From Saccostrea echinata (Eukaryota): a stretch of 64,000 nt of DNA. Of the stretch, positions 1-21,852 are shown one piece after another. The notes under the pieces are model-generated. The model saw only the letters and a program-made list of their open reading frames with translations, was not told where the DNA came from and did no database searches. The first letter of the stretch is position 1. The number at the start of each line of letters is the position of its first letter. Position numbers and translations under genes: made by a program. The stretch covers positions 3,100,001 to 3,164,000 of the forward strand of contig NW_026889760.1 in the NCBI RefSeq assembly GCF_033153115.1. Direction: 5' to 3'.

Positions 1-122
1 GTTCGAATTTCCTCAAAAATACATTACATAGAAAATATACATTATCCTTTACCCAAGTGCCTAGGGAACTAAATGTAGATTAACCTTTCGAATGAGAAAA
101 TAATCCAATTACAATCCTTTAC

Positions 123-214
123 TGTACAGGAAGAAAAGGAGAGATATGTAGTCTTTTTTGTAACAGATACACTTCAATGAGAATTTTGCTTTCACCATAT
201 ATGGGCGCAGCCAT
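123..214 (-). CDS. Possible first coding exon of a divergently transcribed gene that continues off the left edge (MAAPIYGESKILIEVYLLQKRLHISPFLPV...); weakly mitochondrial-presequence-like
   Basis: Minus-strand AAGATGGCTGCG (YY1-type start context) at 214. Frame is open for 30 codons to a CA|GTAAAG candidate donor. ATG is ~230 bp head-to-head from the SDR gene ATG. No homology recognised. Confidence 0.4.
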
Positions 215-443
215 CTTTTATTTTAAATAACTCCTACGCTACTTGTGTTGGTTTTGGCCTCGCGATATCTTTAATTGGCATAGTATATGAAGTCTTTATG
301 GATAAATTCGGATATGTAAATAATAGATCATCCAGAAACTGAAATTTTTATTAAAAATTGTTCATGAAGAAATTTGTTTTTTATTTACACGAATATTATA
401 AGTACAAGTTACTAAATTTGTTGCCCACATGTGAATCGTGTCC
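215..443. promoter_or_regulatory. Putative bidirectional housekeeping promoter
   Basis: CCTCGCGATA (258-267) resembles the TCTCGCGAGA promoter palindrome. A YY1-like CCATCTT overlaps the minus-strand ATG. Lies between two divergent ATGs. Confidence 0.4.
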
Positions 444-3400
444 ATGGCCTCGGTTGTGTCAAAATTTAAGGTTAGAACATGAAATCCCTTGTAATATAAC
501 AAGATATCAATTTTATAATTTAACCATTACACATTTTTAGTGGTCGATCGATTCCTTTTTTTTTTTGCAAGTCCAATTTTAGGTATAGAAAGGTACAATT
601 TTGTTTCAAATTGGAGACAATTCGAACGTAAAGTGTTGTTTACATTGTACATTTATGTCAATTCGTTTACAGGGTACTGTTTTCCTAATTGCGAATGGTT
701 CTAGAAATCTAGGAAGAATATGTGCAGAAAACTTTGTTCAGAGAGGAGGGAGAGTTGTTTTATGTGACACAGACACAGAAGCAGGAGAAGAAATACAAGA
801 GAGTTTGGGAAGAAATAACTGCTTGTTTTTTACTGCAGATGTAAGTTGAGATGTGGACAGGTTATGATTTAGTGGAAGCCTCCCATTTATATTGGGATAA
901 AGATCAGTTGCATACATAAATGCTGTTTTAATTGATAGGAATTTGTGATATGCGTACTTGTATATTGTAAAGAAAATCAGTATGAGGTAAAATTACTCCC
1001 CCTTTAAGGATGTACAACACACCTACCCCAAAAATTTCCTGTCGTTTAATTTTCGCTATTTTTGTATATCTTATACATGACTATATCTACTATGTGTATG
1101 TACATTTTGGTCAAAATCGTTCAAGCAGAAATTGGACAGGAAGTTCCTAAAGTTACCCCCCTTTGGCTGATCACGAGTACAAAAAAATTTCAACCAACTA
1201 ACTATAAAATCCCTTATTTCAAAATATTTAAGGTTAGCCTAGCTGTCAAAATTTGCCGAATCGTTCGTTTAACTATTAAACACACAAACAAAGTGAATTT
1301 GTAGAGGTACATTTCCAGAAAAACGATTTTGAAGAATCTAAACCTAAAAACTATGGTTCATTTTTGCATTGAAAAATGCATGATTTTCAAATGAAATATT
1401 TTTTAATGAAAAAATCTGTCGTTTAATTTTGAAAAAAATAATTACTTCTTGTAACTGATGATCAAAATGTTCTTGATAATTTTTTGAAATTTTTTTAAGC
1501 AACGTGTTTTGAATTTATAGCGGAAAAGCTCTCCTCCCCCTCTCTCCGTAAGTTACGTTTCTCACAGCGTCTGAGACTTGGAACGAAAGCAATGCTATGA
1601 ATCTACAAATACAGATAAAAATTCCTAGCTGGAAAATATCTTTTACTTAATAAATGTAATGTACATTATATTTATCACAAATATATAACTTTACATCTGC
1701 ATTTAAATGAAGATGAGTAAGCAATTTCTGAAATTTTAAGACCCCCCCCCCCCCCCTCCATTATTCTCTGCAATGCAGGACATTCGAGCTTGAAAAAAAA
1801 CAAACATCGGTTACGTCTGCATAATATATATAATTGCATATTGAACTCCCAAAGTAATGTCCTTCATTCGTGTATACAGATTAAATATTGACTACTAGTA
1901 TTTTTTGTTATTCTAAATATTATTTTTTTTATATTTATATTTAGTAAAAATCTAAGGATTTTATGACCACGTGTCCGGTTTGGCGTTCATGCACACAGGT
2001 GCAGTTTCAAACCTTTATATGACTTCTACTTGCATTGAATATTATTTTTTAAGTGAACCAACAGTGGTGTATGTAGGTACAACTCTCTTGTGATGAAAAT
2101 GGAATATATGTACGTGTAGGTTTTTAATTATTTCTGTTTTCAAACGAGAGGGTGATACCCCCCCCCCCCCCCCCCCCCCTATTGTATCCTTCTATTGTTT
2201 CAATAAATGGAAATGATGTTTTCGTCCATATTAACTTCAATTTTACCAAATTGTAAATTATTTATCAATATTAAAATTATTCGTGTGCCTGAATCATCTA
2301 CAATGGTATCATCTACATTGGTATCAATCGTTTTTTTTTTTTTATTCAAGGAAATGCGATCTAAAACTATTTTCAGAAAAAGATTTTCTCAGTGGGGTGC
2401 AACCGTTGTTTTAATTTCAATAAATAATTTTTCACTGTTGATACTTACTTTAATTTGTATAAACTTTGGCTTTCAGTTCTTGTGTTCCTTGCAACACACT
2501 GTAAATGTATTTGTGTATTTGTGAGGGGAAAAAACCATAATTCTTCAGAAAACAGGAGGAATAACTCAGCTAAGGGGAGGAAAGACATACACCGCTACAT
2601 TTTTAGAGTTGTTTTTCTTTGATCAGTGACCTTCTGAAAACGGTTACTCTTTTTCATTTTTTTTTTTCAAAGAAAAGAAAAGCAAGAAAATGTTTATTTT
2701 CGTAATATGATAATATTTAGACATACCGGTAATATTTTTTTCTCAGTGTTATGCGGCTGATTGTAAGGGGACAAAGCAATGTAGAGTAGCATTAACATTT
2801 TTGATTAAAACATTACCTTTGTGTATATCATAAATACAATATTAAAGAATTAATTAACTAAATTTAAATTAAAGAAGGAATGTACTGTCTTTTTTTCTTT
2901 TTTATGGAGGAGGGGATTTATTGCAATTGCGCAAATGATCAAGGATAGGATTTGGTATTCCTAAAGAAACCACAATAAAAACCTCTATTCTTTTTTTTTT
3001 ACATTAATTACATCGGGATCGTATCGCTCGTCATTTTGATGCTTCATAATTAACGTCAAATTAACGTTATGTTAAACGTTTTATTGAAATCCCAAGAGTT
3101 ATCTCCCCCAGTGTGTTGTACGTCTTTAAGCTAGAAAATGCTTGGTTTATAAAGAGAGAATTTTTATGTTATGGCATACATGTACTTTCGATATAATTGT
3201 GATTTATTATGCACTTCTTTTAGCTAACAAAAGAAGAAGATGTTGAGAAGGCAATAAATTTGACGGAAGAGAAGTTTGGAAAACTTGATGTTACGATCAA
3301 TTGCCCGAGTTATGCAAGGACTAGCAAAATTCATATCAAATCTCAGATAGAGAGAGAAAATTCACATGAAAACACGCAAACTGAAACCAGGGGAGAAAAG

Positions 3401-5199
3401 TTAACAGAGGAGTTTATGGAGAAACTTTTAAGGGTTTGTATCAAAACAATTTATCAATATGAATCATTACAGCCCAATCACATGTATTTTATGATTAAAA
3501 TATATATATTAGTGCATGCCGTCTAAGTAAATGCAAGAGAATATTTTCTAATATCATGTAGATTAAAATGTATTTGTAAGATGTAACTATCTAGGTTTTA
3601 TTGGAGCACACAGTAAATGCATAAATGGCTTCATTGTTCATGCAAATTACTAATTAGCTGCATAGTAATTTCTGAGATAATTTACTCATTTAATTCAGTA
3701 CATGGTTACTCGTAATTTACTGCAAGTACTATGATATTCATCCCCCATTAAAATTTTTTCATGTTTTCCATGAAGTTGATTACATTTTTTGCAGGAAAAT
3801 TTGACCAGCACATTTAATGTATGTAGGCTAAGTGCTGGACTGATGTCTAAAAATGAACCTGACTCAAATGGACAAAGAGGGGTAATCATCAACAAGTCTC
3901 ACACTTTAGGATTTGGAAGTTCCCTAGTTCCTTACACCATGTCCCAGGCTGCGATAATTGGAATGACACTTCCAATGGCCAGGGATTTTAACGATCTGGG
4001 TATAAGAGTCAACAGTATTGCAACAGGTGACTTCAGTTTAAGTAGTTGAATTTTATTTTTAGGGGTGAAACGGTTCACTGTGGTATCCATTCACCACATT
4101 ATTTTTTTTTCTGGGTTTGATACATGGTAAAAATTCTCCATTTTCGGTTTGGTTCATATTTTGGTCAGGATCATTATGCAGTCGGGTTTGGTATAAGTAA
4201 ACCCATGCTACTCGGCATAATTTAATTTTTAAAATGTAAATTTTTTAGGACTGGTAGTTTGTAAAATAATCTTTAACAGTCAGATCATTCTAATCAATTT
4301 CTTCCAGTCAGTTTGCACTTAGATTTAGTGACAGGATTTATTGAAACAAAACATAAAACAATGTTGAAATTTTTTCTATCAAAATATATCATATCGAAAA
4401 TAACCGTACCAACACAAAATTATACAATATGTATCATATCGTGAAGGAGGCGTATCGTTTCATCCCTATTTATTTTAGTATTTTGGCCAGACAGCTATCT
4501 GGATTGTAGAGTAACAAAATTTCACCAACCTTGACTAGTTCATTCCTATTATCACCTTTCATCCGTGGGTAAATCAATCATTGTAAGATCATTTAATGTC
4601 ATCTTTAGAAGGAGTTTTGCTCCTTTTGTCTTGAAATGACATTTGTTTTTCAAGTACAAACATGCCAAGGCTTTCAATGAGGAGAGGCAAGAGGTGATTT
4701 TTCATCGTTTCAATGATCAGAATTCTCTGCTTCAAATTTCATAATTGGCAAAATTATTGGAAATAGTTCTAAAAAAGCCTCTTAAAAGGAATAAATTCAC
4801 CTTTTCATTTCGATATTATTGAAACCCCTTGAAAGCCTGCATGCTGTTACATTAATTTTTCAATCATAAAGAAAATGTTAAAAATGTCAAGTAATACTTC
4901 CATATTTCTGTCATATAGGCCTAGGATTAAGCATAAGATATACCTTTTCAAAATGATTTAATATTGGATAAAAATGAATAGAATTTCTTTCGTTTTTGTT
5001 TACAGGGTTTTTAGACTACCAAATACCAGAGGGATGGCCTAAGAAAAGAGAGCGAAAGTTTTGTAGTTTAATGGCATTTCCTCATAAACTTGGTTCATCA
5101 CAAACATTCTACCATCTTTGTGAGAAAATAATTGACAATCCATATGTGAATGGAGAAGTTATCAAACTAGATGCAGGGGTGCAAGCAGTGATACTGTGA
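444..5199 (+). CDS. HSD17B10/SDR5C1 (3-hydroxyacyl-CoA dehydrogenase type 2, MRPP2)-like SDR, 276 aa, divergent with a degenerate active site
   Basis: Exons 444-470, 673-840, 3224-3433, 3795-4026, 5006-5199 are all GT-AG and phase-compatible. Family signatures: MASVVSKFK|GTVFLI, LG.NNC.F..AD, KFGKLDV..NC, NEPDSNGQRGVIIN, GMTLPMARD, GIRVNSIA, FP.KLG, IIDNPYVNGEVIKLD. Confidence 0.9.
1008..3125. mobile_element. Non-autonomous Kolobok-like DNA transposon in intron 2
   Basis: TTAA on both sides (1004-1007, 3126-3129). Imperfect TIR GGATGTACAACACAC / GTGTGTTGTACGTCT with purine-purine termini. Confidence 0.7.
4060..4468. mobile_element. hAT-type MITE
   Basis: TIR TAGGGGTGAAACG / CGTTTCATCCCTA. 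Perfect 8-bp TSD TTTATTTT (4052-4059, 4469-4476). Confidence 0.8.
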
Positions 5200-6006
5200 T
5201 AAAAAATATTCAGTCAATACACATTTCTTAATATTCAGATATATAGCTGAAATACCTGTATGGTTAGACTAAACGTTTGCTCTGGATATCAAAGTTTTGA
5301 GGAGTTTTCAGGAAGCCATGCAGGTTTGCATTATATGATTTGCCGTCATGCTATGAACTCTACATCATTGCTAACACAAAAGAAGTTATAGTGTAGGAAA
5401 AAGAAAGCAGATATGGTCCATCCCAGATATACATTTACTTGTAATTTGAAAGATGAGAGCACTACACTCTATATTATGAATTCTGAATGATAAATGGTAC
5501 ATGAAATGCATAGAGTTTTAATAAAAAAAAAAAGAAAGATCTGTTTTAAGAATGTAATCATATTTTAAGAAAAGAATAATAAATGAATTGTTTATTAATA
5601 CATGCAGTTATAATGTTAGCTTACTTAATCAGAATTTTAAGCAGTCATTATATTTTGCAATTCATTTAAAAACATTAAGTTGTGAATAAGTATGGAAAAA
5701 ACATTATCACACAGACGTGTCTATTGTGTATTCTTCCTTATTGGTACAGTGTAGTAGTTCAAAGGTAGACTAGAGTATAATTTTTTTAGGGAGTTCATTC
5801 TATATACCCAGTTATTTTTGCACAGGCATCTAACATATGGATTGTGTAACCCCTCCCTCCCAGTAATTTATAAAAAAAATTCATTTTTATCCTATATAGC
5901 ATATAATATCAACAGTGTGATATTTTCATTTTTGTTCCTTTATGGATATACATGCAGAGGGACAATCTCTGAAACTTAATAAAATGAGAACTAGTATCAG
6001 ATATAA

Positions 6007-6474
6007 AACAAGCATTCTGAGAGTATTGCATGAGCAATACTAGTCCCCTACCGGCAAGTGTAATCTGGTTCTGTTCCCGTTAAGAATTGAAAATGCCATA
6101 ATTCCGTCAAAAATTAATGAAGCGGGACGAAATGCAAACTTGATCTATAACTAATCAAGGTAAAGCCACATACCAAAAATCAGCTCAATATCTACAAGCG
6201 TTTAGAAGAAAATTGCGGAAAACCCGTAAAAATTGAAAAGGCCGTCATTCCGTCAAAAATCAATGAAGCGGAACGAAATGCAAACTTGATCTGTAACTCA
6301 TCAAGATACACTCACACACCAAAAATCAGCTCAATATCTGCAAGCGTTTAGGAAAAAAGTGCGGAAAACCAAGTGGGACAGACAGAGGGACAGACAGACA
6401 GACGGACAGACAGACGGACGGACAGACTCAGAGGAAACCTATAGTCCCCTCCGGTTTCACCGGTAGGGGACTAA
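6007..6474 (+). mobile_element. Helentron-associated non-autonomous element (HINE/CvA-like), copy 1
   Basis: 5' box with TAGTCCCCTACCGG, two ~120-bp internal repeats, GACA/GACG microsatellite and 3' hairpin TAGTCCCCTCCGG...CCGGTAGGGGACTA. Near-identical to copies at 8127 and 8814. Confidence 0.85.
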
Positions 6475-8126
6475 TAATTTAGGCATGATATTCTAGGAGT
6501 TCATATATTTTTGATACATTATTAATTATGTCTTAAAAATATCCCAGATTTGGGGGAAGGGGGGTTACACTATCCACACATCAGCTCATTCAAGGAGGGA
6601 GGATCCTGCTTTCAAAAGTCTTAAAACAAAAAATGGGGGCCAATACAATTCTTTTGACACTACAGAATATTTAATATGACCTTTTTGCACTGAAATTGTG
6701 TCTTAGACATAAATCACTTCGTAGTTTTTCCTGTAATATAAATTTATCCAAATAAAATGGGACCAAATATACTCTTATTCTATCTTGAAAGGACACATTA
6801 AAAATTGTAAGAAAGAAAAGGTTTCAAATTACTTCGCAGAATGATCAAAGTTATCTCATATATTCAGAAAAGAAAATCAAAAGTGGGGGTCTATGACATA
6901 CATTTTTAGATATTACTGAAAAAGTGTTAATTTTAAGTTAAAACTGGCCCTAATATTTCGTGGATTTTCATAATATACTTACTATATTTGTCACACTATG
7001 ATGATAGAATTCATAAAAGTTAATTGAATAAATATTGAAGGACCAGCATAAAACATTTCACTGCACAAAATAACTCTGTGTGCAACGTGCATGGGAAAAT
7101 AGGAATCCAAACTTAACAGTGCTGTAAATACTTTGAAGGAGAAAAATTGATCATTTTCTTCTAAAATACCTTCCATCAAATATAGTTCCTCAATTAATGA
7201 TTTTTATATGGAATTTATTCGTGGGTTTTTAATTGACTATAGTTTAATTTGCATTTTAGAATCCAAAATTAATGCAAGAACTAAAATATGATGCAGATTT
7301 TTAGGAATAAAGGTCCAGACAAAAATCTGCTCAAAAGATCAGGATCGAACCTCTTTAAGTATGTTAATGAACAAAACAAAATTAATTAATTGACCAAGGC
7401 TGATCACTTCTACTTAATGTGTACTTAAGAAATCTCTATACACTGCACATAATTCTAATTTCATGGTACTTGTAAGTAGCTAAAGTGATCTGCCCTTTGA
7501 TTTAAAAATCTAGTGTAGTACACAGTTGTGATCCATTCGAGTAATTCAAGGTAGTCCGATCCTCAGGTTCTGAAAATCAGCCTTTCAGTAATTGAAAATG
7601 CTCACAAAAATGTCTCTGATATGATTTCACATAGTAACGTGAATTTACCCATGGTATTTCTTCAAAGTTCATCATTATAGTTATATAATCATATTATATA
7701 GGGAAATTATCAAATCTCAAATATATTTTCAGGAAATGCGAATAAAAACACCAGCTAAGCATTTTCTAGTTGAAAATTGATCAACAAATATAATTCAGGA
7801 TAAAAAAGAATATAGGTATCCAGGCATTTGGAGGAAATTGCATCGTTTTGTTTTGCTTTTTTTTCTCGCTTATATACAGTACATGCATTTAAGATCTTCT
7901 CTTTGTTATATAATACATAGTGTAAAAAGCTTGTGTTATCATTGCATGACATCACATATTACGTCTAATTCCATATCTTGCTAATACAGGCCACCAATCG
8001 CTCTAACTCATATCCGAATGATATGAAAAGGTTTTCGTTAGCGGGACTTCCGGATATGCGTTGGAGGGACTTTTTATCTTCGCCTCGGCGGTAAGTTGAG
8101 CTCTTTTTCTTGTATTTTAACCCTTT

Positions 8127-8196
8127 TTAGTCCCCTACCGGTGAAACCGGAGGGGACTATAGGTTTCCTCTGAGTCTGTCCGTCCGTCTGTCCGTC

Positions 8197-8231
<35 letters not shown>

Positions 8232-8642
8232 CTGTCTGTCTGTCTGTCCCTCTGTCTGTCTGTCAGTCTGTCCCACTTGGTTTTCCGCACTTTTTTCCTA
8301 AACGCTTGCAGATATTGAGCTGATTTTTGGTATGTGAGTGTATCTTGATGAGTTACAGATCAAGTTTGCATTTCGTTCCGCTTCATTGATTCTTGACGGA
8401 ATTACGGCCTTTTCAATTTTTTCGGGTTTTCCACAATTTTCTTCTAAACGCTTGTAGATATTGAGCTGATTTTTGGTATGTGGCTTTACCTTGATTAGTT
8501 ACAGATCAAGTTTGCATTTCGTCCCGCTTCATTAATTTTTGACGGAATTATGGCATTTTCATTTCTTAACGGGAACGGAACCAGATTACACTTGCTGGTA
8601 GGGGACTAGTATTGCTAATGCAATACTCTCAGAATGCTTGTT
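8127..8642 (-). mobile_element. HINE copy 2, inserted into the left TIR of the 7987-13730 element
   Basis: Reverse complement of 6007-6474. The empty site (T-run) is visible in the right TIR at ~13585-13595. Confidence 0.85.
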
Positions 8643-8813
8643 TACAAAACAAAGAATGTGATTCGACCCGTTTTATTGAGTTGTTGCTTCGTTATGAACT
8701 GTTTGGGCTGAATTCTGTGTTGTAATGACGCTAGAAAGTTTATTCTGCAAGTTTCGTCAAACAAATCTAACCCGGCGGTACCCGTCGTGTCTGCGATCAA
8801 CTAAAACAAAGCT

Positions 8814-9281
8814 AACAAGCATTCTGAGAGTATTGCATTAGCAATACTAGTCCCCTACCGGCAAGTGTAATCTGGTTCTGTTCCCGTTAAGAATTGAAAA
8901 TGCCATAATTCCGACAAGAATTAATGAAGCGGGACGAAATGCAAACTTGATCTGTAACTAATCAAGGTAAAGCCACATACCAAAAATCAGCTCAATATCT
9001 ACAAGCGTTTAGAAGAAAATTGCGGAAAACCCGTAAAAATTGAAAAGACCGTAATTCCGTCAAAAATCAATGAAGCGGAACGAAATGCAAACTTGATCTG
9101 TAACTCATCAAGATACACTCGCATACCAAAAATCAGCTCAATATCTGCAAGCGTTTAGGAAAAAAGTGCGGAAAACCAAGTGGGACAGACTGACAGACAG
9201 ACAGAGGGACAGACAGACAGACGGACGGACAGACTCAGAGGAAACCTATAGTCCCCTCCGGTTTCACCGGTAGGGGACTAA
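8814..9281 (+). mobile_element. HINE copy 3, inserted into the left TIR of the 7987-13730 element
   Basis: Same family as 6007-6474. The empty site CGCTTATTAGCTTTG is in the right TIR at ~13408-13422. Confidence 0.85.
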
Positions 9282-10454
9282 TAAGCGATTGTGATACATT
9301 TTATTTATGTCAATTTGTCCCTAAAGGATCGTTAAACACTTTGACATAACATAGGCTGTCCTTTTTTTGATTTAAGCGATAGCTATGAATGAAAAAAAAA
9401 ACATGATATGAGTTAGCGGAACCAGATATGAGTTAGCGGTACATGATATGAGTTAGAGAAGCAAAATAGAATGCTAGATAATTTACTATTATGTTCAACT
9501 ATACCACACACGAATTTGAATAAAGCCATATTTCAGGTATTATGATTTCACTATCATTCTAAATTTAAATTGGATACATTGGTTGTCACCATGGAAAAGG
9601 GGGGGGGGGGTGTAAATGTATCTAAAATATTTCTTGTTTCAGGTTATTAATTGTCGGTCATCGAGGCTATTTTTTCATTGTCATTTGGCTATTGCCATGT
9701 TTGGACTGAATCAGTTAAAATACAGCGATTTCTTATTCTGCTGAACATTAGAATTCATCTAATTTCAGGTTTCAATATGGGCCTTTTCAAAGGCAAACGC
9801 AGAAAAGGGATAGCCATATCACGATCGAGTAAAAGTTTCCTCGTATTATAACAGAAAACGGTCATTAATTGACCGATCACCATTGAAATCACCGGCTGCA
9901 AAGAAGTGCATGCTTTCTCCTAAATCATCAACCCTCTTTAAAAGTCCGAGGAGTAAACTGTCTCTAAAGTACGCGGGGGGGGGGGGGGGGGCTTTTTCTG
10001 AAAATAGTCTTCTACTGTAATTTTAGCACGTAAATTTTAATTAAGGTGCTACTTGCCCATCCCCCCCCCCCCCATTTTTTCTTGCTATATGATCATTCAT
10101 ACAGCATTTGAAACATAAAGATAACATCATAATTAAAAAAAAAAATAGAAAAATGAGAATATGAAGCTTTTAAATATGTATGGTTCCCTGTTGCATGGAG
10201 TACCTCATACAGAAATCTGTACTCGACTGTTTTAGACATGCCCACATGTTCACTAAATGTATATTTATGCTTTTCTTCAGGTCTTATGCTTTATACTGGC
10301 AATATTTTGGTAATCAAGCACTGCTGAAAAAAATTAACATTCGAAATATGCATACCTATATAGAGCATCAAAATTGGTAAACTGCTGAGAAATGTAATAA
10401 AATTTATTTTGTGATAGGGATTAAGCTATGGTGAATATTTCTGCCCCCCCCCCT

Positions 10455-10700
10455 CAACTTGTCAGATAGCTACATCAATTTGTCAGATCTTTTCGTTAGC
10501 TTGTCACTTATTCACGAGTTTAAAATCAATATGAAAATGTGTCCATGCTTAATTCAGGCCGTCAGGTGACAAAATATTTTTCTGGTAAGTGGACATAGTA
10601 TCTGACAAGTCAACATAAGATCTGATATGTCGATATATTATCTGACAAGTCGAAATAATTTTCTGAAAAGTCGATATAATATTCTACAAGTCAACATCAT
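10455..10700. repeat. ~20-21-bp minisatellite (TCTGACAAGTCGACATAATA-like) with inverted units upstream
   Basis: About 6 degenerate tandem units at 10580-10700 and inverted CTTGTCAGA units at 10455-10510. Confidence 0.55.
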
Positions 10701-11327
10701 TATCATTAAGACATTTTTCCTAAACCTGTTTGATTAATATTCAAAGTGAAGATTGGTGTTTCGAAGGCATTATTTTTTTTTTCCAGAGACCACTTCTTTG
10801 ACAGCAGAGAAAAAGATAGAAAAATGCGGCGCCTAGAAAAACCATGAATGAACCTACAAGAGGAGACTTACCGATACGAAGCTGACATGGATATAAAGTA
10901 AATGAAGCAAAGATACACCCTTCCAAAAGACTTGGCATTAAATTGGACACATTTTGATTGCTATTGTTACCAGTACACTATGATTCAATAATTTGAGTAA
11001 TATACACGTTTTGTGTTGTATTGCAAAAACTAAAATAAAGTAAAACACATTGTTTATGTATTTATTCAAATATTTTCAAATATTTTCTCTCCCTGAGATA
11101 TTTGATGTACAAAAAATAAACTTGAAAATAAAATATGGAAAGTTAAAACAGAATTTTTTAGAAACAATCACTTACAAACTCTCTGTCGGTCGATCGATTG
11201 ATCGATACATGTAAATGAAAGATAAATCAAACATAAATGAAAGTCTTTTCAACATGCATGTACATAAAAATCAATAACAAAACTAAAATAATAATAATAA
11301 AAAAAAACAATATCAGAGGTAATCATT

Positions 11328-11882
11328 TTACACGTGATGAGCCTTTGAGTGACGACTGAGTGCAGCTGGATATTTGTTAACATTTTCCACACATCTCGCA
11401 CACGTACATGCGGCCTTGGCGAGCACTTTTTATATGTAATTTCATTGCTCTTTTTGTTGAAAATGTTGCATCACAAGTATCGCACTTGGACAGGTTAAAG
11501 GATTCTCCATCTGCACTGTTACTGCACCTTCGTTTGTGTTCATTTAAGCTATGTTCAAACGAGTATTTTTTGTTGCATTTATTACAATGCAAATTGAAAA
11601 TGTTATGTTTTGATCTTCTGTGGCCTTTTAGTTGATATGCCGTTGTACAAGCGAAGTCGCATTTGTTACATTTAAACTTCTTTTCTCCCAAATGAGTACT
11701 CAATTAGTGTCGATGTTTGCTGTTTTTCAGCGTGAACGTTTTCTCACAGTACAGACATTTGTATTAGAACTGCTTTCTGACCCAAATGTAATGTCTTTCT
11801 ATGATAGGCAAGTTTCCCTGCTTGAGTATATTTAGCGGTACACTGTTTACAATGATAATATTTTCTCGCCATCTTTCATCAA
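11328..11882 (-). pseudogene. Multi-C2H2 zinc-finger pseudogene (at least 6 fingers); 5' part runs into the N gap
   Basis: Reconstructed fingers: CKQC..YHRKTLH, CLYC..HRH*LSTH, CNKC..HRRSKH, CNKC..HKRRC, CDTC..HIKSAR, CEMC..(frameshift)KYPAALSRHSKAHH. Contains in-frame stops and frameshifts. Confidence 0.85.
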
Positions 11883-12011
11883 NNNNNNNNNNNNNNNNNN
11901 NNNNNNNNNNNNNNNNNNNNNNNNNNNNNNNNNNNNNNNNNNNNNNNNNNNNNNNNNNNNNNNNNNNNNNNNNNNNNNNNNNNNNNNNNNNNNNNNNNNN
12001 NNNNNNNNNNN
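11883..12011. other. Assembly gap (129 N)
   Basis: Run of N in the sequence. Confidence 1.
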
Positions 12012-15000
12012 AAATGGAGAGTGAAAACACAAGCTATTTGTCTCAATATTAAAAAATGTAAAATTTGATTTTGGGGGGGTGGGGGTGGAAATTACATTAT
12101 CAACGAACTCCCCTGACAGTGGACTGCCTGGAGAGACCAAAACTTGCTAATAGTTGACAAACTATCATATTAAATATCAACTGCACATTCTACGAGTGAT
12201 CACCAGCCCTGATAGTTGAGTGAAGTAAAACAAATTCAATAAATAAGTCGCAAAATTGTTTAATCTTATAAAAACAATGACAACAGTGCTAAACCAATTC
12301 AACTATTTCTTTTTAATAATTCAACCTAACTAAACCTAAAATAATTCAACCCGACCTGAGAAACCCGAGTAAAGGGAACACATTTTAGGCTAAGTCTAAA
12401 CAATTCTTAGTTTGGAGTTGTCGACCTTAACTTTGAGCTGATAGATAGGAAGGAATGTTTTTTTTTTAATTTTATTTTGAAAAATTTAATTACGTTTCCA
12501 GTTTTTTGGTTGAAACAAATCAAAGGAATTTTCTTGGGGTTTCTAAATGCTTCACTTATTTTAAGTCTTTCATTGACTAATACAAAAATCAAAAATAGAA
12601 AGTGAATTAGTCTCAATTTCATAAAAACTTGTAACTAACCAGTAAAAAAAATTCATTTTAAAAAATGACTGGAAAGATAGTTTGGGTCGGTAGGCAACTT
12701 GCAAACAAATTATTTTTATTTTATAGGCCTTACTAAATAGGAGTAATTGGTTAAGATCCAATTCGAACAGTAGCATCAAGTTCAATGAGATTGGAATTTA
12801 AATAATTCTTTTGCGATTTTGTTGTCAATACTTCTAGTATTAAGACTTAACAAGCACTCATTTATTATTCCTGGCATGAATGGTCAGCGTGATAAAAATT
12901 ATTGCTCTGGTTTCTAGTATCAATTAAGCCCCCCCCCCCTTTCCCCAAATTTACCTTCAACAGTTTCAAATGCTCACTGAAGTGGTGTTGCCCCAAATAC
13001 TTTTTGTTGCAGTAAAGTTAAGTCAGGATAAAGTATCAATAAAATTTGGTTGTGAAAGAAGTTGGAACCTGCCCACCTTCGAGTTTGGATAATATCCATT
13101 TTTTTTTAATGTTGCTTGAACTTTTTTTTCATATAAGTTTTCAATTTTTTTTCCATGGCCAGCCCCCATCCAATTTCAAAAACGATAATCAGTGCCTCTT
13201 GCTAAACACGTTTGAAGATTATACCCGTTATGATTTTTTTCTAACTCATATCATGTACCACTAACTCATATCTGGTCCTGCTAACTCATATCATGTTTTT
13301 TTTTCATTCATAGCCACCCCTAAAATTAATAAAGGACAGCCTATGTTATGTCAATGTGTTTTAGGATCCTTGGGGGACAAATTGACATAAATAAAATGTA
13401 TCACAATCGCTTATTAGCTTTGTTTTAGTTGATCGCAGACACGACGGGTACCCCCCGGGATAGATTTGTTTGACGAAACTTGCAGAATAAACTTTCTGGC
13501 GTCATTACAACACAGAATTCAGCCCAAACAATTCATAGTGAAGCAACAACTCAATAAAATGGGTCGAATCACATTCTTTGTTTTGTAAAAAAGGGTTAAA
13601 ATACAAGAAAAAGAGCTCAACTTACCGCCGAGGCGAAGATAAAAAGTCTCTCCAACGCATATCCGGAAGTCCCGCTAACGAAAACCTTTTCATATCATTC
13701 GGATATGAGTTAGAGCGATTGGTGGCCGTGTAATAAGCATTGGTATCTAATGCTAGATTAAAGGAAATTCGATTTCTCTAAAAAATGAATTTATTATTTT
13801 CTTTTATGGGGTACAAATGTCAACTTTTACATGACCGTTTCTAAGTTTAAGACTTCAAAGAACTTTGAATCATATTGAGATGCATAAAATGAAAATTGTT
13901 GCACGAAAAGATCTTAATTTCAAGCTTCATTTTGAAACTTTTTAAATAAAATAAAAAAATTAAGAGTTATCCTTCCTGGCTGAGTATTGGACATCCTTAA
14001 GCATTATATTAGGGCAAAACGAAGTTACTGAATGCTTTATTGGCATGTGTTTTCCTTATGTAGGCCCAAGTAAAAAACGGTGATTTCTGGTCAACAATAC
14101 TTTGTTGCCCGAGAACATTTTCTTGGGGAAGAATGGCATGTACCGTAAATGAATCAACTTAATAATTTCATTTTTATATGATATAATTTTCTTTAAGTCC
14201 ATTTTTTTTCATTAGTGTATAGATGTTGAGTTGATCAAGGATTGTAGTGAAAGAGGATTTCGAACACGGTTCAGACCTTGGGTATTAAATGGTAATGTGT
14301 AATGCATTGAAAATATTAGATTTTAAACTTAATTTTCTAGTAAAATTTCATCACATTTTTCTTACCCTCTGTATGAAATAATCTGAAAAGGTAAGCTTTT
14401 TAATGAATCTGACACAAATTAATAATGGTCACTGGCAGGTGATTTTTTTTTAATTCCTGAAATCAGAATCTTAATTATCTTTCAACTTCTTTTTAATTTC
14501 TTTCTTCAACAGTATTTATAAATAAATTACCCTAAATAATTTTTTTAAATGAAAAAACTTCTTGAAAATTTTCAATGTGAATTTGATTTGAACAATTATG
14601 AATTCAGTTTCCTATAAAAGGTGGTACAAAATATTTCTCGCCGTTCAACACATGGCCTTTGCTACATGTAGTGGTTAAGTCATGTAATCACATCCATATG
14701 TCGTTGTATGCAAGTACATGTAGGTTGTACTTTTCCTTAAGTTTTAGAGATTGGCCATGTACGGTAATTTTATATCGTACATGGCCAATCTCTAAACTTG
14801 AGAAAAAGTACAATCACATGCGCGGAACTAGAGGGGGTCGTGGGTGGGGGGTCCGGACCCCGCCCACCTCCTTGAATTTGCAGAGCTATTAAAAGTATAC
14901 ATGTATACTGAAACTGATTAAAAAATGACTTTGGACCCCCCACCCCACCCCCGAACACGTAGACCCCACCACCACCACCACCACAAAAGTTTTTCACGTT

Positions 15001-15949: not shown

Positions 15950-18440
15950 ACAAAAATTTTAACATTGGTCATAACTTTTGAATGAGAAAAGACAGGGCAT
16001 TTACATTTCTTACGTACATTACCTGTGACAATACCTTTCCAAACATACTATGATTTTTTACTCCTTGACCTTGAAGTTTGACCTACTTTTCAAAAAGTAG
16101 GTCAAACATAACGTTTGTATAAGGCGCCGTTTTGGTATTTATTGCCATTTAGTGATATTACCTATTCGAATAGGTGATATCACCTATACGAATAGGTGAT
16201 ATCACCTATTCGAATAAGTGATACCACTCATTCAAATTGAATAGGTGATATCACCTATTAGATTACGTGATATCACTTATTCGAATAGGTGATATCACTT
16301 ATTCGAATAGTGATATCACCTATTGGAAATGAATAGGTGATATCACCTATTCGACTAGGTGATATCACCTATTCGTGCTGAATAGGTGATATCACCTATT
16401 CTAATAAATGATATCACCTATTCCAATATTTGATATCACCTATTCAATTTGAATAGGTAATATCACCAATTTGAATAGGTGATATGCTTACAATAATAAA
16501 TAATGAATGCTCCCTTCCTCAAGACTATCTAGATTTCCATTGGAACCAAGCAAATTCGGGCTTCCCCGTTTTCCTCTGTAATTGAGACATTTTAGATACC
16601 TTATGTTATCAACCCCTGTAAAGTTATATAAATTTTATAAATTATACCAAGATGGGATACAATTTAACAGAGTGGCATACCTTTCTCTCTTTATTATGTA
16701 AGGTGGGGCATTTTCCGTATGGAACAGTTAATACTTATTATGCGATTTTCACGATTTTTCCTATAGTATACATGATAGATAAGTGTAATAAATATAATTT
16801 GTGAGCAAAAAAAACTACAAGATCTACTGGGGTGCTTAAAACTAAATGCGAAGCTGAAATCCATCGTCTCCAAGAACGGTAAGTTATAAAACGAAAGTGA
16901 AAGTAAATGAGAATTAAATGCTATAGTCTTGGGAGCAGTTGTTATTTCATAAATAATTTGAATAGGTGATATCACCTATTCGAATAAGTGATATCACCTA
17001 TTCAAAATGATTAAGTGATACCACCTATTCGAATAGGTGATATCACCTATTTGAATTGGTGATATCACATATTTAATTTGAATAGGTGATATCACCTATT
17101 CGAATAAGTGATATCACCTTTTCAAATAGGTGATATCACCAATTCAAATCAAATAGGTAATATCACCTATTCAAATAGGTGATATCACTTATTCGAATAG
17201 GTGATATCACCAATTGGATAGGTGATATCACCTATTCGAATAGGTGATATCACTTTTTAGCACTGAGTTAATACCAAAACGGCGCCTCATACGTTTGAAT
17301 GAGAAAAGATAGGGTTTTCATATTTCACATTATTCACATTACCTGTGACAAACCCTTTCCAAATATACTACGATTTTTGACCTCATGACCTTGTTGCCTG
17401 GCCTACTTTTAATAAATTTTAACATTTGTTATAACTTTTGAATGAGTAGAGATAGAGCTTTCATATTTGACTTGTCCATTACCTGTGACAAGACGTTTAG
17501 CATGCTATGATTTTTGACCCTGTGACTTTGACTTTCAAGTCTGACCTAATTTAAAAAAAAAAAACATTATTGATAACGTCTAAATGAGAGAGGATAGTGT
17601 GTTCATATTTGACAAGTACATTACCTGTGTCAAAAAGTTTCTGAATATGATATGATAATTGACTCCATGACCTTGAAGTTTGACTTAATTTAAAAAAAAA
17701 TAATTAACACTGGTGGTAACTTTTGAATGAGAGATGATAGAGTTTTCATATCTCACAAGTGCATTACTGTACCAAAAAAAATCCAAGTGTGGAATATATT
17801 CGACCCTGTGACCTTGACTCAAATTCGACCAAATTTTCGAACATTTTATCATTGCTGCTAACTTTTGAAGGAGCGAAGAGCGAAGAAGGGCAATCATATT
17901 TGACACGTGCATTACCTGTGACAAGCATTTCCAAATGCATTATGATTTTTAACCCCAAGACCTTGAAGTTTGACTTATAACATTGCCGATAACTTTTGAT
18001 TGAGAGAAGATAGGACATTTACATTTGACATGTGTATTATTACCTGTTTCAAGACCTTTCCGAATGTACTTTGGTTTTTGACCTCGTGACCTTGATCTTG
18101 AAGTTTAACCTACAGTCTCTCATAATTTTACATTGGTAATAACTTTTGAATGAGAAAAGATAGGGCATCAAGATTTACATTACCTATGACAACACCTTTC
18201 AGAAAGAATTATATCATTTTTGACTTCATGACTTTGACCTAGAATGCTGGCCTACTTATCAAGAATTTTAACTTTGGCCATAAGTATTGCTCCAGAAGAA
18301 ATTAGGCTTTCATACTTTTTTCACATGTGCATTACCTGTGAGAATATCTTTTGGATTGCATTACTAGTATGCTATTTGACCTCATGACCATCATCTTGAA
18401 AATACTGTTTTGAGAAGCTTTCATATTTGCCATAACTATT
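15950..18440. repeat. Degenerate ~120-bp tandem array (HINE-type central repeats), interrupted by the 16118-17291 element
   Basis: About ten recurring units: ATAACTTTTGAATGAG...CATTACCTGTGACAA...TGACCTTGAAGTTTGACC. Confidence 0.75.
16118..17291. mobile_element. Non-autonomous IS3EU-like DNA transposon with arrays of palindromic subterminal repeats
   Basis: TIR TATRAGGCGCCGTTTTGGTATT and 6-bp TSD CGTTTG (16112-16117, 17292-17297). Excision restores the host satellite unit. Two arrays of ~22-bp GAATAGGTGATATCACCTATTC. Confidence 0.75.
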
Positions 18441-20418: not shown

Positions 20419-21852
20419 CTACATATCTTCCACACTCCATTTGTAAGCCATATCTTCAACAGCTTTTTTGTCCGAGAGTTTTGCATATATTGATCGTTCA
20501 AAACCATTTGATCTGTCTACACCATCCCATCTGTAGCCTGGCATAATCCCAAATCTGTTTGGAGGTGGAGGGGGACCTTTATATTTTGGAAGTTCTTTTT
20601 TCGTTTTGTTGTTGCTTTTTTTCTTCTTAATGAAGGCTAACATTGGGTCATCAGCTCTTTCCATATCCTTTAACATAGCATCTAAATCTTTGTCATCTCG
20701 TGCTCGTGCCAAAGGTTTAGACATTTCATACAGATGATCTTCTAATTTAGCTGCCCTGTTCTCTGTTTGCTTTATACCTTTCCCCCATTCATGGTGCTTG
20801 GCTTCTATTTCTTCTTTTCTCTTTATTTCCTCTATTGTTGGCTCTGCATCTTTTTTCTTTTGCTGTCTTCCACTTTTTCTGTATTGAGTCTTAGCATCTT
20901 TTCCCAAGAGATCTGATGATATCTGTTTAAATGTTTCATCTTCTTTCCTTCTCAACACATCTGCTTCTGTCTTCATATCTTTTGCTGAAGAGAGACCAGC
21001 TTTCTTTCCAGACAATGTTTTATTCATTTTACTACTATTCTTTTCATCTTGTTCTTTCTGAAAGGAATGGTCCTTGAGATTTTTACTTTTTCCTGATTCA
21101 TTAGCACTGTTAGATTTTCTGAAAACACTATGGTCATATTTTGCATCTTCTATTTGTTTTCCTTTTTTAGAATAACTTTTAGGTAATTTCCTTGGTGGAG
21201 ATTGGTCAGAATCTGAATCATGTCTTCGATTCCTTTGTGGTGATTGGTCAGAATCTGATTCATGTCTTCGATTCCTTTGTGGTGATTGATCAGAATCTGA
21301 TTCATGTCTTTGATTCCTTTGTGGTGATTGGTCAGAATCTGATTCATGTCTTTGATTCCTTTGAGGTGATTGGTCAGAATCAGAATCATGTCGTCCTTTT
21401 CTTGGAGGTGACTGGTCAGAATTTGAATCATGACGTCCTTTTCTTGGAGGTGATTGGTCAGAATTTGAATCATGTCTTTCTCTACCTATTGGTGAAGTAC
21501 TAGAGTCTGAGTCGTGTCTCTTTCTAATTTGAGAGTTTTTCAAGTTTTCATCTTTTGCTGCGACTCCCTTCCATTTGTCCGTTGTGTACGCCTCAAGTTC
21601 TTGAATATGTTTTGGACGCTCATCCATAAACGCTGCAACAGTTGGTACATTTTCTTCTATATTGTCATATGCTGAGGTATCCTCAAGATTACTTGGAAGA
21701 AGTGTCTTTAAATCAATATCATCATCTACAATTCTTGACTTTGGAACTCTGACATTTTCTGGCTTTTTTCTTCGTTTCTTTCGTTTATCTAATGCTGTGT
21801 AATCAGAAGTGTAACGTTTCAGGTATTCTTCTTTGCTCATTCCTATGGACAT
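20419..21852 (-). CDS. BUD13: BUD13 homolog (RES splicing complex), 477 aa, single coding exon
   Basis: N-terminal [20 protein letters not shown] repeats, and C-terminal Bud13 domain ([52 protein letters not shown]). Likely start is ATG 21852; the ORF-track extension to 22011 is promoter/UTR. Confidence 0.95.
21190..21520 (-). repeat. 42-bp (14-aa) coding tandem repeat in BUD13, 8 units
   Basis: Units of the form RH(D/E)S(D/N)SDQSP(P/Q)R(K/N)x. Confidence 0.9.

What the first reader, a model, noticed from the sequence alone, without database searches (positions are those of the whole stretch)
444..5199. Intact HSD17B10 paralog that has lost its dehydrogenase machinery: candidate dedicated scaffold (pseudoenzyme) subunit of mitochondrial RNase P
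Seen: the ORF and splice sites are intact, yet several SDR functional motifs are altered. The glycine-rich TGGASGLG reads ANGSRNLG, NCAG reads NCPS, the catalytic Ser region INTAS reads INKSH, and catalytic YxxxK reads YTMSQ (Lys to Gln). The family-specific NEPD.NGQRG, GMTLP.ARD and C-terminal NGEVI.LD segments are retained. Established: HSD17B10/SDR5C1 (fly scully) moonlights as the tetrameric scaffold for TRMT10C in mt-RNase P and tRNA m1R9 methylation, a role largely separable from catalysis. Inference: after duplication this copy may have kept only the structural tRNA-processing role, or may act in a heterotetramer with an active paralog.
Basis: partly seen in the sequence, partly recalled or inferred. 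Interest (0 to 1): 0.78.

Follow-up and report, generated by a model that had tools for sequence, protein, structure and literature searches.

The report
Catalytically dead HSD17B10 paralog in oysters
Oysters carry and express a second copy of the mitochondrial enzyme HSD17B10 that has lost its cofactor-binding and catalytic residues, so it probably serves as a non-enzymatic structural subunit whose exact job is still unknown.

Summary
Window 444-5199 (+) holds a five-exon gene with GT..AG introns. Its product is identical to the NCBI protein "3-hydroxyacyl-CoA dehydrogenase type-2-like" of Saccostrea echinata (P0154, 276 aa).

- **Motif loss:** against human HSD17B10 it reads T16A, G17N, S20R, G21N, NCAG to NCPS, S155H and K172Q, with a 2-residue deletion before Tyr168. 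Asn121 and Tyr168 are kept.
- **Expression:** intron-less contigs in 3 of 4 public runs laid (2 studies) carry exactly the predicted splice joints.
- **Second gene:** an intact canonical gene lies on another contig, with introns at the same four positions.
- **Conservation:** the same losses are fixed in all five full-length orthologs (Saccostrea, Ostrea, Magallana gigas/angulata, two unnamed oysters). No member was found outside oysters. Open frames across this clade argue for selection, with about 19 stop codons expected under neutrality.

It is therefore a conserved predicted pseudo-dehydrogenase that databases label as an ordinary enzyme.

The mt-RNase P scaffold idea is feasible: human S20F and K172A mutants keep that role. 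It is not shown, though. The tRNA-facing loop and the former lid are the least conserved parts, Arg226 is not kept, and the canonical copy looks fully competent.

The parts
444..470 (+). Exon 1, coding (MASVVSKFK). Transcript contigs begin at or a few bases before the ATG.
   Evidence: Joint 470/673 seen in runs X1 and X2.
673..840 (+). Exon 2, Rossmann beta1-alpha1-beta2-beta3. It holds the degenerate glycine-rich motif ANGSRNLG (691-714). Asp41 is kept.
   Evidence: Joint 840/3224 in X1, X2 and X5. The exon ends match those of the canonical paralog.
3224..3433 (+). Exon 3. It holds NCPS (3299-3310) in place of NCAG and the loop D region.
   Evidence: Joint 3433/3795 in X1, X2 and X5.
3338..3388 (+). 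Stretch of loop D (P0154 residues 104-120) that holds a lineage-variable insertion of 15 residues relative to human. It lies in the loop that corresponds to human residues 97-107.
   Evidence: Gaps in the alignment to 1u7t. Length and sequence differ among the 5 orthologs. 0 of 30 columns are invariant at P0154 residues 106-135.
3795..4026 (+). Exon 4, covering helix E, the HSD10-type hairpin NEPDSNGQRG, INKSH (3888-3902; catalytic Ser to His), YTMSQ (3933-3947; catalytic Lys to Gln) and helix F (GMTLPMARD). It is the most conserved part within the oyster clade.
   Evidence: Joint 4026/5006 in X1, X2 and X5.
5006..5199 (+). Exon 5, coding. It holds the former substrate lid (variable), the FPHKLG segment (Arg226 to Lys), NPYVNGEVIKLD (Asn247 kept), a hydrophobic tail, and the TGA stop at 5197-5199.
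5200..5608 (+). 3' untranslated region. Contigs end at 5528-5532 (X2, X5), just after an AATAAA at 5520-5525, and at 5608 (X1), after a second AATAAA at 5580-5585.
   Evidence: table 8; sequence.

Best explanation
This is a real, transcribed and correctly spliced paralog of HSD17B10 (SDR5C1). It arose by DNA-level duplication before the oyster family Ostreidae radiated. It then lost the NAD(H)-binding glycines and two of the four catalytic-tetrad residues, and has been kept with an open frame ever since.

It is most likely a pseudo-dehydrogenase. It keeps the SDR fold and the helix E / helix F / C-terminal-strand blocks that build SDR tetramers. I therefore think it works as a non-catalytic subunit of an HSD17B10-type tetramer, either on its own or mixed with the active paralog, and not as an enzyme.

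Shown here:
- gene structure
- expression
- motif loss
- conservation across oysters
- existence of an intact paralog

Inferred only:
- loss of NAD binding and of activity
- oligomerisation
- mitochondrial location

Whether the tetramer serves TRMT10C and mitochondrial tRNA processing is open. I put that at about 0.15-0.2.
For: **Gene model and motifs:**

**Expression:**
- 3 of 4 runs laid (X1, X2, X5; 2 studies) hold intron-less contigs of 886-1143 nt with all four GT..AG joints.
- The genome holds only two loci for exons 2, 4 and 5, and both contain introns, so the contigs are not a retrocopy.

**Paralogy:**
- The canonical gene on contig C51 has TGGASGLG, NCAG, NTSS and YSASK, with introns at the same four positions.
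- The best solved relatives are mammalian HSD17B10 (183 bits), against at most 130 bits for bacterial relatives.

**Conservation:**
- All 5 full-length orthologs share A[NSC]G[STA][RK]NLG, NCP[STY], INK[SA]H and Y[ST]MSQ.
- The clade has 100/100 support.
- 129 of 260 columns are invariant. These are concentrated at P0154 residues 136-210 (57 of 75) and 241-270 (21 of 30).
- Of 87 columns invariant in 19 animal canonical proteins, 42 are kept and 21 are replaced by one fixed new state.

**Selection proxy:** about 337 replacements on the clade's tree would bring about 19 stop codons if the gene were neutral, and none is seen.

**Fold:** the ESM Atlas's own model has pTM 0.85 and TM 0.87 to SDR clusters over 253 residues. 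Pfam adh_short scores 89.6 bits.

**Loss of activity is plausible:** human K172A abolishes dehydrogenase activity and S20F cuts it to 16% (PMC3526285, passage read).
Against: - No dN/dS could be computed, because no ortholog DNA was obtainable (closed; one search gave only bacterial genes).
- The open-frame argument is biased, because only predicted proteins are in the database.
- The protein evolves three to four times faster than the canonical copy in the same species pairs (68% against 89% identity for Saccostrea-Ostrea).
- Loss of NAD binding is inferred from motifs only. Asp41, Asp64, Asn90 and Tyr168 remain.
- The remodelled former active-site loop is itself among the most conserved stretches. 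That fits a new binding or catalytic pocket better than a passive scaffold.
- Arg226, which the human tetramer needs, is Lys in 2 of 5 and Ser in 3 of 5.
Confidence: 0.55

Rival explanations
1. After duplication the two jobs of HSD17B10 were divided, and this copy is the dedicated platform for TRMT10C in mitochondrial RNase P / RNase Z and m1R9 methylation. It would act either as a homotetramer or together with the active copy.
For: - The human scaffold role needs neither the active site nor an intact cofactor pocket. S20F and K172A, at two of the positions changed here, keep full methylation and cleavage (PMC3526285 and PMC4446446, passages read).
- Arg130 and Asn247 (subunit interface) are kept in 5 of 5.
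- The N-terminus resembles that of the canonical protein.
- TRM10-family and PRORP-like loci exist in the genome. One 255-aa ORF on contig C29 aligns best over its length to human TRMT10C, at E 2.5e-7.
- The canonical oyster copy has changed 11 of 102 columns that are invariant in 16 other animals, among them L131Q, G134V/I, G173A and V176A.
Against: - Loop 97-107, which lies along the anticodon arm in the human complex (PMC8437803), carries a variable insertion: 4 of 45 columns invariant.
- The former lid, which lies near TRMT10C in human, is variable: 9 of 30 columns invariant, and Pro210 is kept in 1 of 5.
- Arg226 is not kept.
- The conserved RMxP tail is replaced.
- The canonical copy keeps Arg130, Pro210, Lys212, Arg226 and Asn247.
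- The dead clade keeps the ancestral state at only 4 of those 11 oyster-changed columns. That is no more than its overall rate of 42 of 87.
- The groove residues that hold the TRMT10C adapter helix are not named in the texts I read, so they could not be checked.
Confidence: 0.17
2. The copy is neofunctionalised. The remodelled pocket (Arg/Lys20, Lys153, His155, Tyr168, Gln172) binds a new ligand or partner, or carries out a chemistry that does not need NAD. The function is unrelated to tRNA processing.
For: - The changed residues are themselves fixed: INK[SA]H, SSL[VA]PY[ST]MSQ and [RK]NLG are the same or nearly so in 5 of 5.
- P0154 residues 166-195 have 23 of 30 columns invariant, as high as in canonical bivalves.
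- 21 canonical-invariant columns were replaced by a single new state.
- The stem branch is long, at 3.06 changes per column, and is followed by slower change.
Against: - No ligand or activity can be inferred from sequence.
- The same block also contains helix F of the tetramer interface, so its conservation has another explanation.
- No related family with such a pocket was found.
Confidence: 0.2
3. It is a decaying duplicate, that is, a transcribed pseudogene in the making with no function.
For: - It evolves three to four times faster than the canonical copy.
- Its Pfam score is half that of the canonical copy (89.6 against 175.1 bits).
- dN/dS was not measured.
Against: - The frame is open and all four splice joints are intact in three genera.
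- About 19 stop codons would be expected if the gene were neutral.
- Half of the columns are invariant, and they lie in blocks.
- Spliced transcripts are present in two studies.
- Many full-length transcript-sized contigs exist for the Magallana orthologs.
Confidence: 0.04
4. It is still an NAD(P)-dependent dehydrogenase with an unusual motif set.
For: - Asn121, Tyr168, Asp41, Asp64 and Asn90 are kept.
- A Lys appears at position 153, near the old site.
- The fold is predicted intact.
Against: - Two of the three motif glycines are lost and a bulky Arg/Lys sits at position 20. Human S20F leaves 16% activity.
- NCAG, PG and Thr203 are changed.
- The catalytic Ser and Lys are lost. Human K172A has no activity (PMC3526285, PMC4446446).
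Confidence: 0.04

Closest known systems
Human/rat HSD17B10 (SDR5C1, MRPP2; PDB 1u7t, 1so8, 7onu, 1e3s)
   Same: - It is the best solved relative, with E 6e-53 over residues 1-272.
- It has the same fold family and the same HSD10-type hairpin NEPDxxGQRG.
- It shares helix F GMTLPxARD and the C-terminal NGEVIxLD.
- Asn121, Arg130, Tyr168 and Asn247 are kept.
   Different: - Identity to canonical animal proteins is about 39%.
- The glycine-rich motif, NCAG, the catalytic Ser155 and Lys172, and PG/Thr203 are lost.
- There is a 2-residue deletion before Tyr168.
- Loop 97-107 carries a 15-residue insertion.
- Arg226 is Lys, and the RMxP tail is replaced.
Canonical HSD17B10 of the same oyster (P0238, contig C51)
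   Same: - Same genome.
- Introns at the same four positions.
- Similar N-terminus.
- Similar helix E, helix F and C-terminal blocks.
   Different: - The two are 39% identical.
- The canonical copy keeps all SDR motifs.
- The canonical copy is 89% identical between Saccostrea and Ostrea, against 68% for the dead copy.
Engineered human SDR5C1 S20F and K172A (Vilardo et al. 2012 and 2015; PMC3526285 and PMC4446446, passages read)
   Same: They carry substitutions at the very positions that are changed naturally here: a bulky residue at position 20 and loss of Lys172. These kill or cripple dehydrogenase activity.
   Different: - The engineered proteins are otherwise wild type and are shown to keep tetramer formation, TRMT10C binding, methylation and RNase P activity.
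- The oyster protein has more than 150 further differences, and none of these properties has been tested.
Dead-paralog partners of active enzymes ('prozymes' of trypanosomatid AdoMetDC and deoxyhypusine synthase; PMC5201418 and PMC3663545, abstracts in the listing)
   Same: A catalytically dead duplicate is kept by selection beside an active paralog of an oligomeric enzyme.
   Different: In those cases heteromer formation and activation are shown. Here no interaction has been shown, and the family is unrelated.
HSD17B8-CBR4 heterotetramer of mitochondrial fatty acid synthesis
   Same: An SDR tetramer built from two different SDR subunits in mitochondria. This is recalled; one search gave only a listing with the start of one abstract.
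   Different: Both of its subunits keep SDR motifs (recalled). It is a different SDR subfamily.

Membership tests
SDR superfamily (classical short-chain dehydrogenases/reductases) | Match to Pfam adh_short above the gathering score | tested here: met
   P0154 scores 89.6 bits against a cut-off of 26.6. The canonical paralog scores 175.1 bits.
SDR superfamily (classical short-chain dehydrogenases/reductases) | Rossmann-type SDR fold | tested here: met
   The ESM Atlas's own model of this exact sequence has pTM 0.85 and TM 0.87 to SDR clusters over 253 residues.
SDR superfamily (classical short-chain dehydrogenases/reductases) | Cofactor motif TGxxxGxG | tested here: not met
   It reads ANGSRNLG. 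Thr16, Gly17 and Gly21 are lost in 5 of 5 orthologs.
SDR superfamily (classical short-chain dehydrogenases/reductases) | Catalytic tetrad Asn-Ser-Tyr-Lys | tested here: not met
   Asn121 and Tyr168 are kept. Ser155 is His and Lys172 is Gln in 5 of 5.
HSD17B10 / SDR5C subfamily (by descent) | Closest relatives are HSD17B10 proteins, and the HSD10-type hairpin insertion is present | tested here: met
   The top PDB matches are all mammalian HSD17B10. NEPDSNGQRG is kept. The clade sits among protostome HSD17B10 proteins in the tree, though its sister group is unresolved.
HSD17B10 / SDR5C subfamily (by descent) | Gene structure shared with the canonical gene of the same genome | tested here: met
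   Introns lie at the same four positions and phases.
HSD17B10 as an enzyme (3-hydroxyacyl-CoA / hydroxysteroid dehydrogenase) | NAD(H) binding and dehydrogenase activity | not testable with these tools
   The motifs predict loss. An assay is needed.
MRPP2 role (platform of TRMT10C in mt-RNase P) | Tetramer-interface residues Arg130, Arg226 and Asn247 (PMC4446446) | tested here: inconclusive
   Arg130 and Asn247 are kept in 5 of 5. Arg226 is Lys in 2 of 5 and Ser in 3 of 5.
MRPP2 role (platform of TRMT10C in mt-RNase P) | Loop 97-107 along the tRNA anticodon arm, and the surface region around Pro210 | tested here: not met
   The loop carries a variable insertion, with 4 of 45 columns invariant. 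Pro210 is kept in 1 of 5 and the lid has 9 of 30 columns invariant. The human anticodon contacts are of minor kinetic weight (PMC12630138, abstract and passages).
MRPP2 role (platform of TRMT10C in mt-RNase P) | Hydrophobic groove that takes the TRMT10C adapter helix | not testable with these tools
   The groove residues are not named in the passages read. No coordinates were available and no complex prediction was possible.
MRPP2 role (platform of TRMT10C in mt-RNase P) | Partner genes present in the genome | tested here: inconclusive
   There is one PRORP exon-level hit at 31 bits, below the cut-off. There are two TRM10-family loci. The C29 ORF aligns to human TRMT10C at E 2.5e-7.
Pseudoenzyme | Homolog of an enzyme that lacks key catalytic residues, is expressed, and is kept by selection | tested here: inconclusive
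   Residue loss and expression are met. Selection is supported by open frames and blockwise conservation in 5 of 5 orthologs. dN/dS was not computed, and no protein or activity data exist.

The most novel reading that the evidence does not exclude
Oysters have split the two jobs of a moonlighting enzyme between two genes. The canonical HSD17B10 keeps dehydrogenase chemistry. The dead paralog, alone or in mixed tetramers, has become the platform on which TRMT10C, PRORP and ELAC2 mature mitochondrial tRNAs. If so, the oyster would be a natural separation-of-function system for HSD10 biology.
Probability: 0.15. Interest if true: 0.8.

Novelty: new variant of a known kind. Interest (0 to 1): 0.5.

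Why it matters
HSD17B10 is a standard example of a moonlighting enzyme. Its dehydrogenase chemistry and its scaffold role in mitochondrial tRNA maturation are hard to separate in vivo, and that difficulty sits at the centre of the debate on HSD10 disease. An old, expressed paralog that has naturally lost the chemistry offers a way to ask which non-enzymatic property selection keeps.

In practice the gene is labelled in public records as an ordinary "3-hydroxyacyl-CoA dehydrogenase type-2(-like)" in Saccostrea, Ostrea and Magallana. Metabolic reconstructions and expression studies of oysters therefore count a probable non-enzyme as an enzyme.

I found no paper that describes a dead HSD17B10 paralog in the held library (searches; the review PMC10941002 was searched for 'paralog'). 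Subscription journals are largely missing from that library.

Tried and rejected
**dN/dS.** A scan of metagenome contigs with the Magallana ortholog gave 80 loci, all at 29-35% identity and so not oyster orthologs. The loci were not used further. No dN/dS is therefore reported. The stop-codon expectation is a weaker stand-in.

**Structure.** Only the ESM Atlas summary was available.

**TRMT10C-contact residues of SDR5C1.** I looked for them in six papers and found no residue list in the main texts. They may be in figures or supplements, which I could not see.

**Timing of the duplication.** The tree leaves the sister group open. An oyster-only duplication is not rejected (AU p 0.405).

**Reciprocal retention.** I asked whether the dead copy keeps ancestral states that the canonical oyster copy lost. 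It does so at 4 of 11 columns, no more than its overall rate of 42 of 87. I rejected this as evidence.

**Horizontal origin or retrocopy.** I rejected both because of the shared intron positions.

**Literature on the M. gigas entry K1PDG2.** No paper holds the term. Oyster expression tables in supplements, which were closed and not asked for, might list the gene.

Full report
**What is there.** Reading window 1-6000 and translating the five stretches gives a gene on the + strand. Its coding exons are 444-470, 673-840, 3224-3433, 3795-4026 and 5006-5199, and every intron runs GT..AG. A later search returned a database protein, P0154, which NCBI names [quoted passage not shown]. The five exon translations tile it exactly, leaving only the one codon split between exons 4 and 5. 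The window is therefore from that oyster or one indistinguishable from it, and NCBI predicted the same model independently. All full-length analyses below use P0154.

**The motif losses are real.** Exon 4 alone matches Pfam adh_short (E 3.7e-8), and its best solved relatives are rat and human HSD17B10. The full-length alignment to human HSD17B10 (1u7t/1so8, E 6e-53) gives the following in human numbering:
- T16A, G17N, S20R and G21N, so TGGASGLG reads ANGSRNLG
- NCAG 90-93 reads NCPS
- T153K and S155H
- two residues missing at 164-165
- Tyr168 kept, K172Q
- P198T and T203Y
- Arg226 to Lys, and R252K
- the C-terminal RMxP tail replaced by a hydrophobic tail
- Asn121, Arg130, Asp41, Asp64 and Asn247 kept
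- fifteen extra residues in the loop that corresponds to human 97-107

The whole protein still passes Pfam adh_short, at 89.6 bits against 175.1 for the canonical paralog. The ESM Atlas holds a model of this exact sequence with pTM 0.85, and it superposes on SDR clusters at TM 0.87 over 253 residues.

**It is expressed and spliced as predicted.** One run search found five holders with 18-22% of the sampled words, which is about the exonic share of the stretch. I laid four runs on window 300-5700. Three of them, X1, X2 and X5, come from two studies. They hold contigs of 886, 1060 and 1143 nt that skip exactly 471-672 (X1 and X2 only), 841-3223, 3434-3794 and 4027-5005. Exons 2 and 4 show 0 other letters. 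The fourth run, X6, touched only intronic repeats. The runs are not on record as RNA. The genome, however, holds just two loci for each of exons 2, 4 and 5, and both contain introns, so intron-less contigs must come from spliced RNA. Two coding differences were listed: a synonymous G>A at 3295 in all three runs and an Ile-to-Leu change at 5191 in X1.

**A canonical paralog exists.** The second locus lies on contig C51. It encodes TGGASGLG, NCAG, NTSS, YSASK and PG..T. It equals the NCBI protein P0238 and has its introns at the same four positions and phases. The copy in the window is thus a DNA-level duplicate of an animal gene, not a retrocopy or a transfer. The two proteins are 39% identical.

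**It is old and confined to oysters as far as the data reach.**
- An all-against-all HMMER search with exon 4 found 1371 proteins at E<=1e-3, but only 3 at E<=1e-30. Canonical HSD17B10-like proteins followed at 58% identity or less.
- Word searches with P0002 (85 hits among 554 candidates) and with a profile of the five dead proteins (1323 hits among 7183 candidates) gave six clusters at 397-542 bits: Saccostrea echinata, Ostrea edulis, Magallana gigas K1PDG2 (partial), and three Logan clusters.
- The next single-domain proteins score 241 bits or less.
- One Logan cluster contains the NCBI proteins of M. gigas and M. angulata, both named as ordinary dehydrogenases.
- All five full-length proteins share A[NSC]G[STA][RK]NLG, NCP[STY], INK[SA]H and Y[ST]MSQ.
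- In a tree of 33 chosen proteins the five form a clade (100/100) on a stem of 3.06 changes per column. Their sister group among protostome HSD17B10 proteins is unresolved.
- A clade of dead plus canonical oyster proteins is not rejected (AU p 0.405).
- One paper puts the split of Asian and Atlantic Crassostrea at about 63 Mya (PMC12021676, passage read). The split from Ostrea and Saccostrea must be older, but I found no figure for it in the text I read.

**Evidence for selection, and its limits.** No dN/dS is therefore given. The stand-ins are these:
- The clade's internal tree length of 1.30 implies about 337 replacements. With 0.056 nonsense per missense mutation for this coding sequence, about 19 stop codons would be expected under neutrality, and none is seen. 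This is biased, because only predicted proteins reach the database.
- 129 of 260 columns are invariant, and they lie in blocks: P0154 residues 136-210 (57 of 75) and 241-270 (21 of 30). By contrast, residues 91-135 have 4 of 45 and residues 211-240 have 9 of 30.
- Of 87 columns invariant in 19 animal canonical proteins, 42 are kept in all five, 21 are replaced by one fixed new state, and 24 vary.

Against strong constraint, the dead copy is 68% identical between Saccostrea and Ostrea where the canonical copy is 89% identical.

**What it most likely does.** The parts that are kept are helix E, the HSD10-type hairpin, strand E, helix F, strand F and the C-terminal NPYxNGEVxKLD. From my recall of SDR structures, not from a test here, these include the elements that build SDR tetramers. 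Experiment anchors three interface residues (PMC4446446, passages read). Arg130 and Asn247 are kept in 5 of 5, but Arg226 is Lys in 2 of 5 and Ser in 3 of 5. My best reading (0.55) is a non-catalytic subunit of an HSD17B10-type tetramer, homomeric or mixed with the active paralog.

One caution applies. The remodelled former active-site stretch is itself nearly invariant, so a new binding pocket is a serious rival (0.2).

**The RNase P idea.** It is feasible. Human S20F (bulky residue in the dinucleotide pocket, 16% activity) and K172A (no activity) both support full methylation and cleavage (PMC3526285). K172A also keeps the tetramer and TRMT10C binding (PMC4446446). The oyster protein is changed at both positions. 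The genome holds TRM10-family loci, one of which aligns best over its length to human TRMT10C (E 2.5e-7), and a PRORP-like exon.

The elements that face TRMT10C and the tRNA in the human complexes are, however, the least conserved parts here. These are loop 97-107 along the anticodon arm and the substrate-site region, which the adapter partly covers (PMC8437803, passages read). The canonical oyster copy keeps Arg130, Pro210, Lys212, Arg226 and Asn247. The human anticodon contacts are of minor kinetic weight (PMC12630138), so the first point is not decisive. The groove residues for the adapter helix are not named in the texts I read, so the key test could not be made.

Canonical oyster HSD17B10 has itself changed 11 of 102 columns that are invariant in 16 other animals, including four in helices E and F. 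The dead copy keeps the ancestral state at only 4 of these 11, which is no more than its general rate. I see no signal of divided labour in that. I put the dedicated-scaffold reading at about 0.15-0.2.

**Novelty.** Automatic annotation has predicted the gene in several oysters, but as an enzyme. I found no description of a catalytically dead HSD17B10 paralog in the held library. It is a new variant of a known kind: a lineage-restricted, conserved pseudo-dehydrogenase derived from a moonlighting enzyme.

Noticed in passing
window 20419-22011 (-): A single uninterrupted 530-aa ORF encodes a BUD13 homolog (Pfam Bud13, E 2.1e-41). It contains a 42-bp (14-residue, [17 protein letters not shown]) tandem repeat of 6.9 copies at 21188-21478. 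A splicing-factor gene with no intron in its coding part may be a retrogene.
   Followed up: partly
G000 contig C51, about 1317500-1324000 (-); loci L003 and L004: The canonical oyster HSD17B10 is itself unusually diverged. Its clade has a stem of 0.55 changes per column, against end branches of about 0.2. In all three canonical oyster proteins, 11 of 102 columns invariant in 16 other animals are changed. Examples are GQRG to QARG, L131Q, G134V/I, G173A, V176A and IAPG to ICPG.
   Followed up: partly
window 1741-1757 and 2158-2179; also about 1000-2800 and 4280-4830 (introns 2 and 4): The introns hold long poly-C runs and dispersed repeats. The same public runs carry contigs at 90-95% likeness to these repeats, so the repeats are multi-copy and their copies occur in the runs.
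   Followed up: no
window 16152-16485 and 16956-17253: Two arrays of a 22-bp unit that contains the palindrome GATATC (13-14 copies each). A 143-bp repeat follows at 17294-17778.
   Followed up: no
window 6076-6427, 8174-8561 and 8883-9234: Repeated 146-bp units with adjoining GACA/GTCT microsatellites occur in both orientations. They border and lie inside the stretch that another first-stage note (s1-813513, 7987-13730) calls a long-TIR transposon.
   Followed up: no
window 39423-39517 (+): ARAGORN calls a 95-nt tRNA-Ser(AGA)-like sequence. It overlaps a 170-aa ORF on the other strand and could be a tRNA-derived SINE and not a tRNA gene.
   Followed up: no
protein P0153 (Magallana gigas K1PDG2, 197 aa): The older M. 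gigas database entry lacks the whole of exon 3, an in-frame skip. No exon-3-skipping joint was seen in the Saccostrea runs, so it is probably a prediction error and not an isoform.
   Followed up: partly
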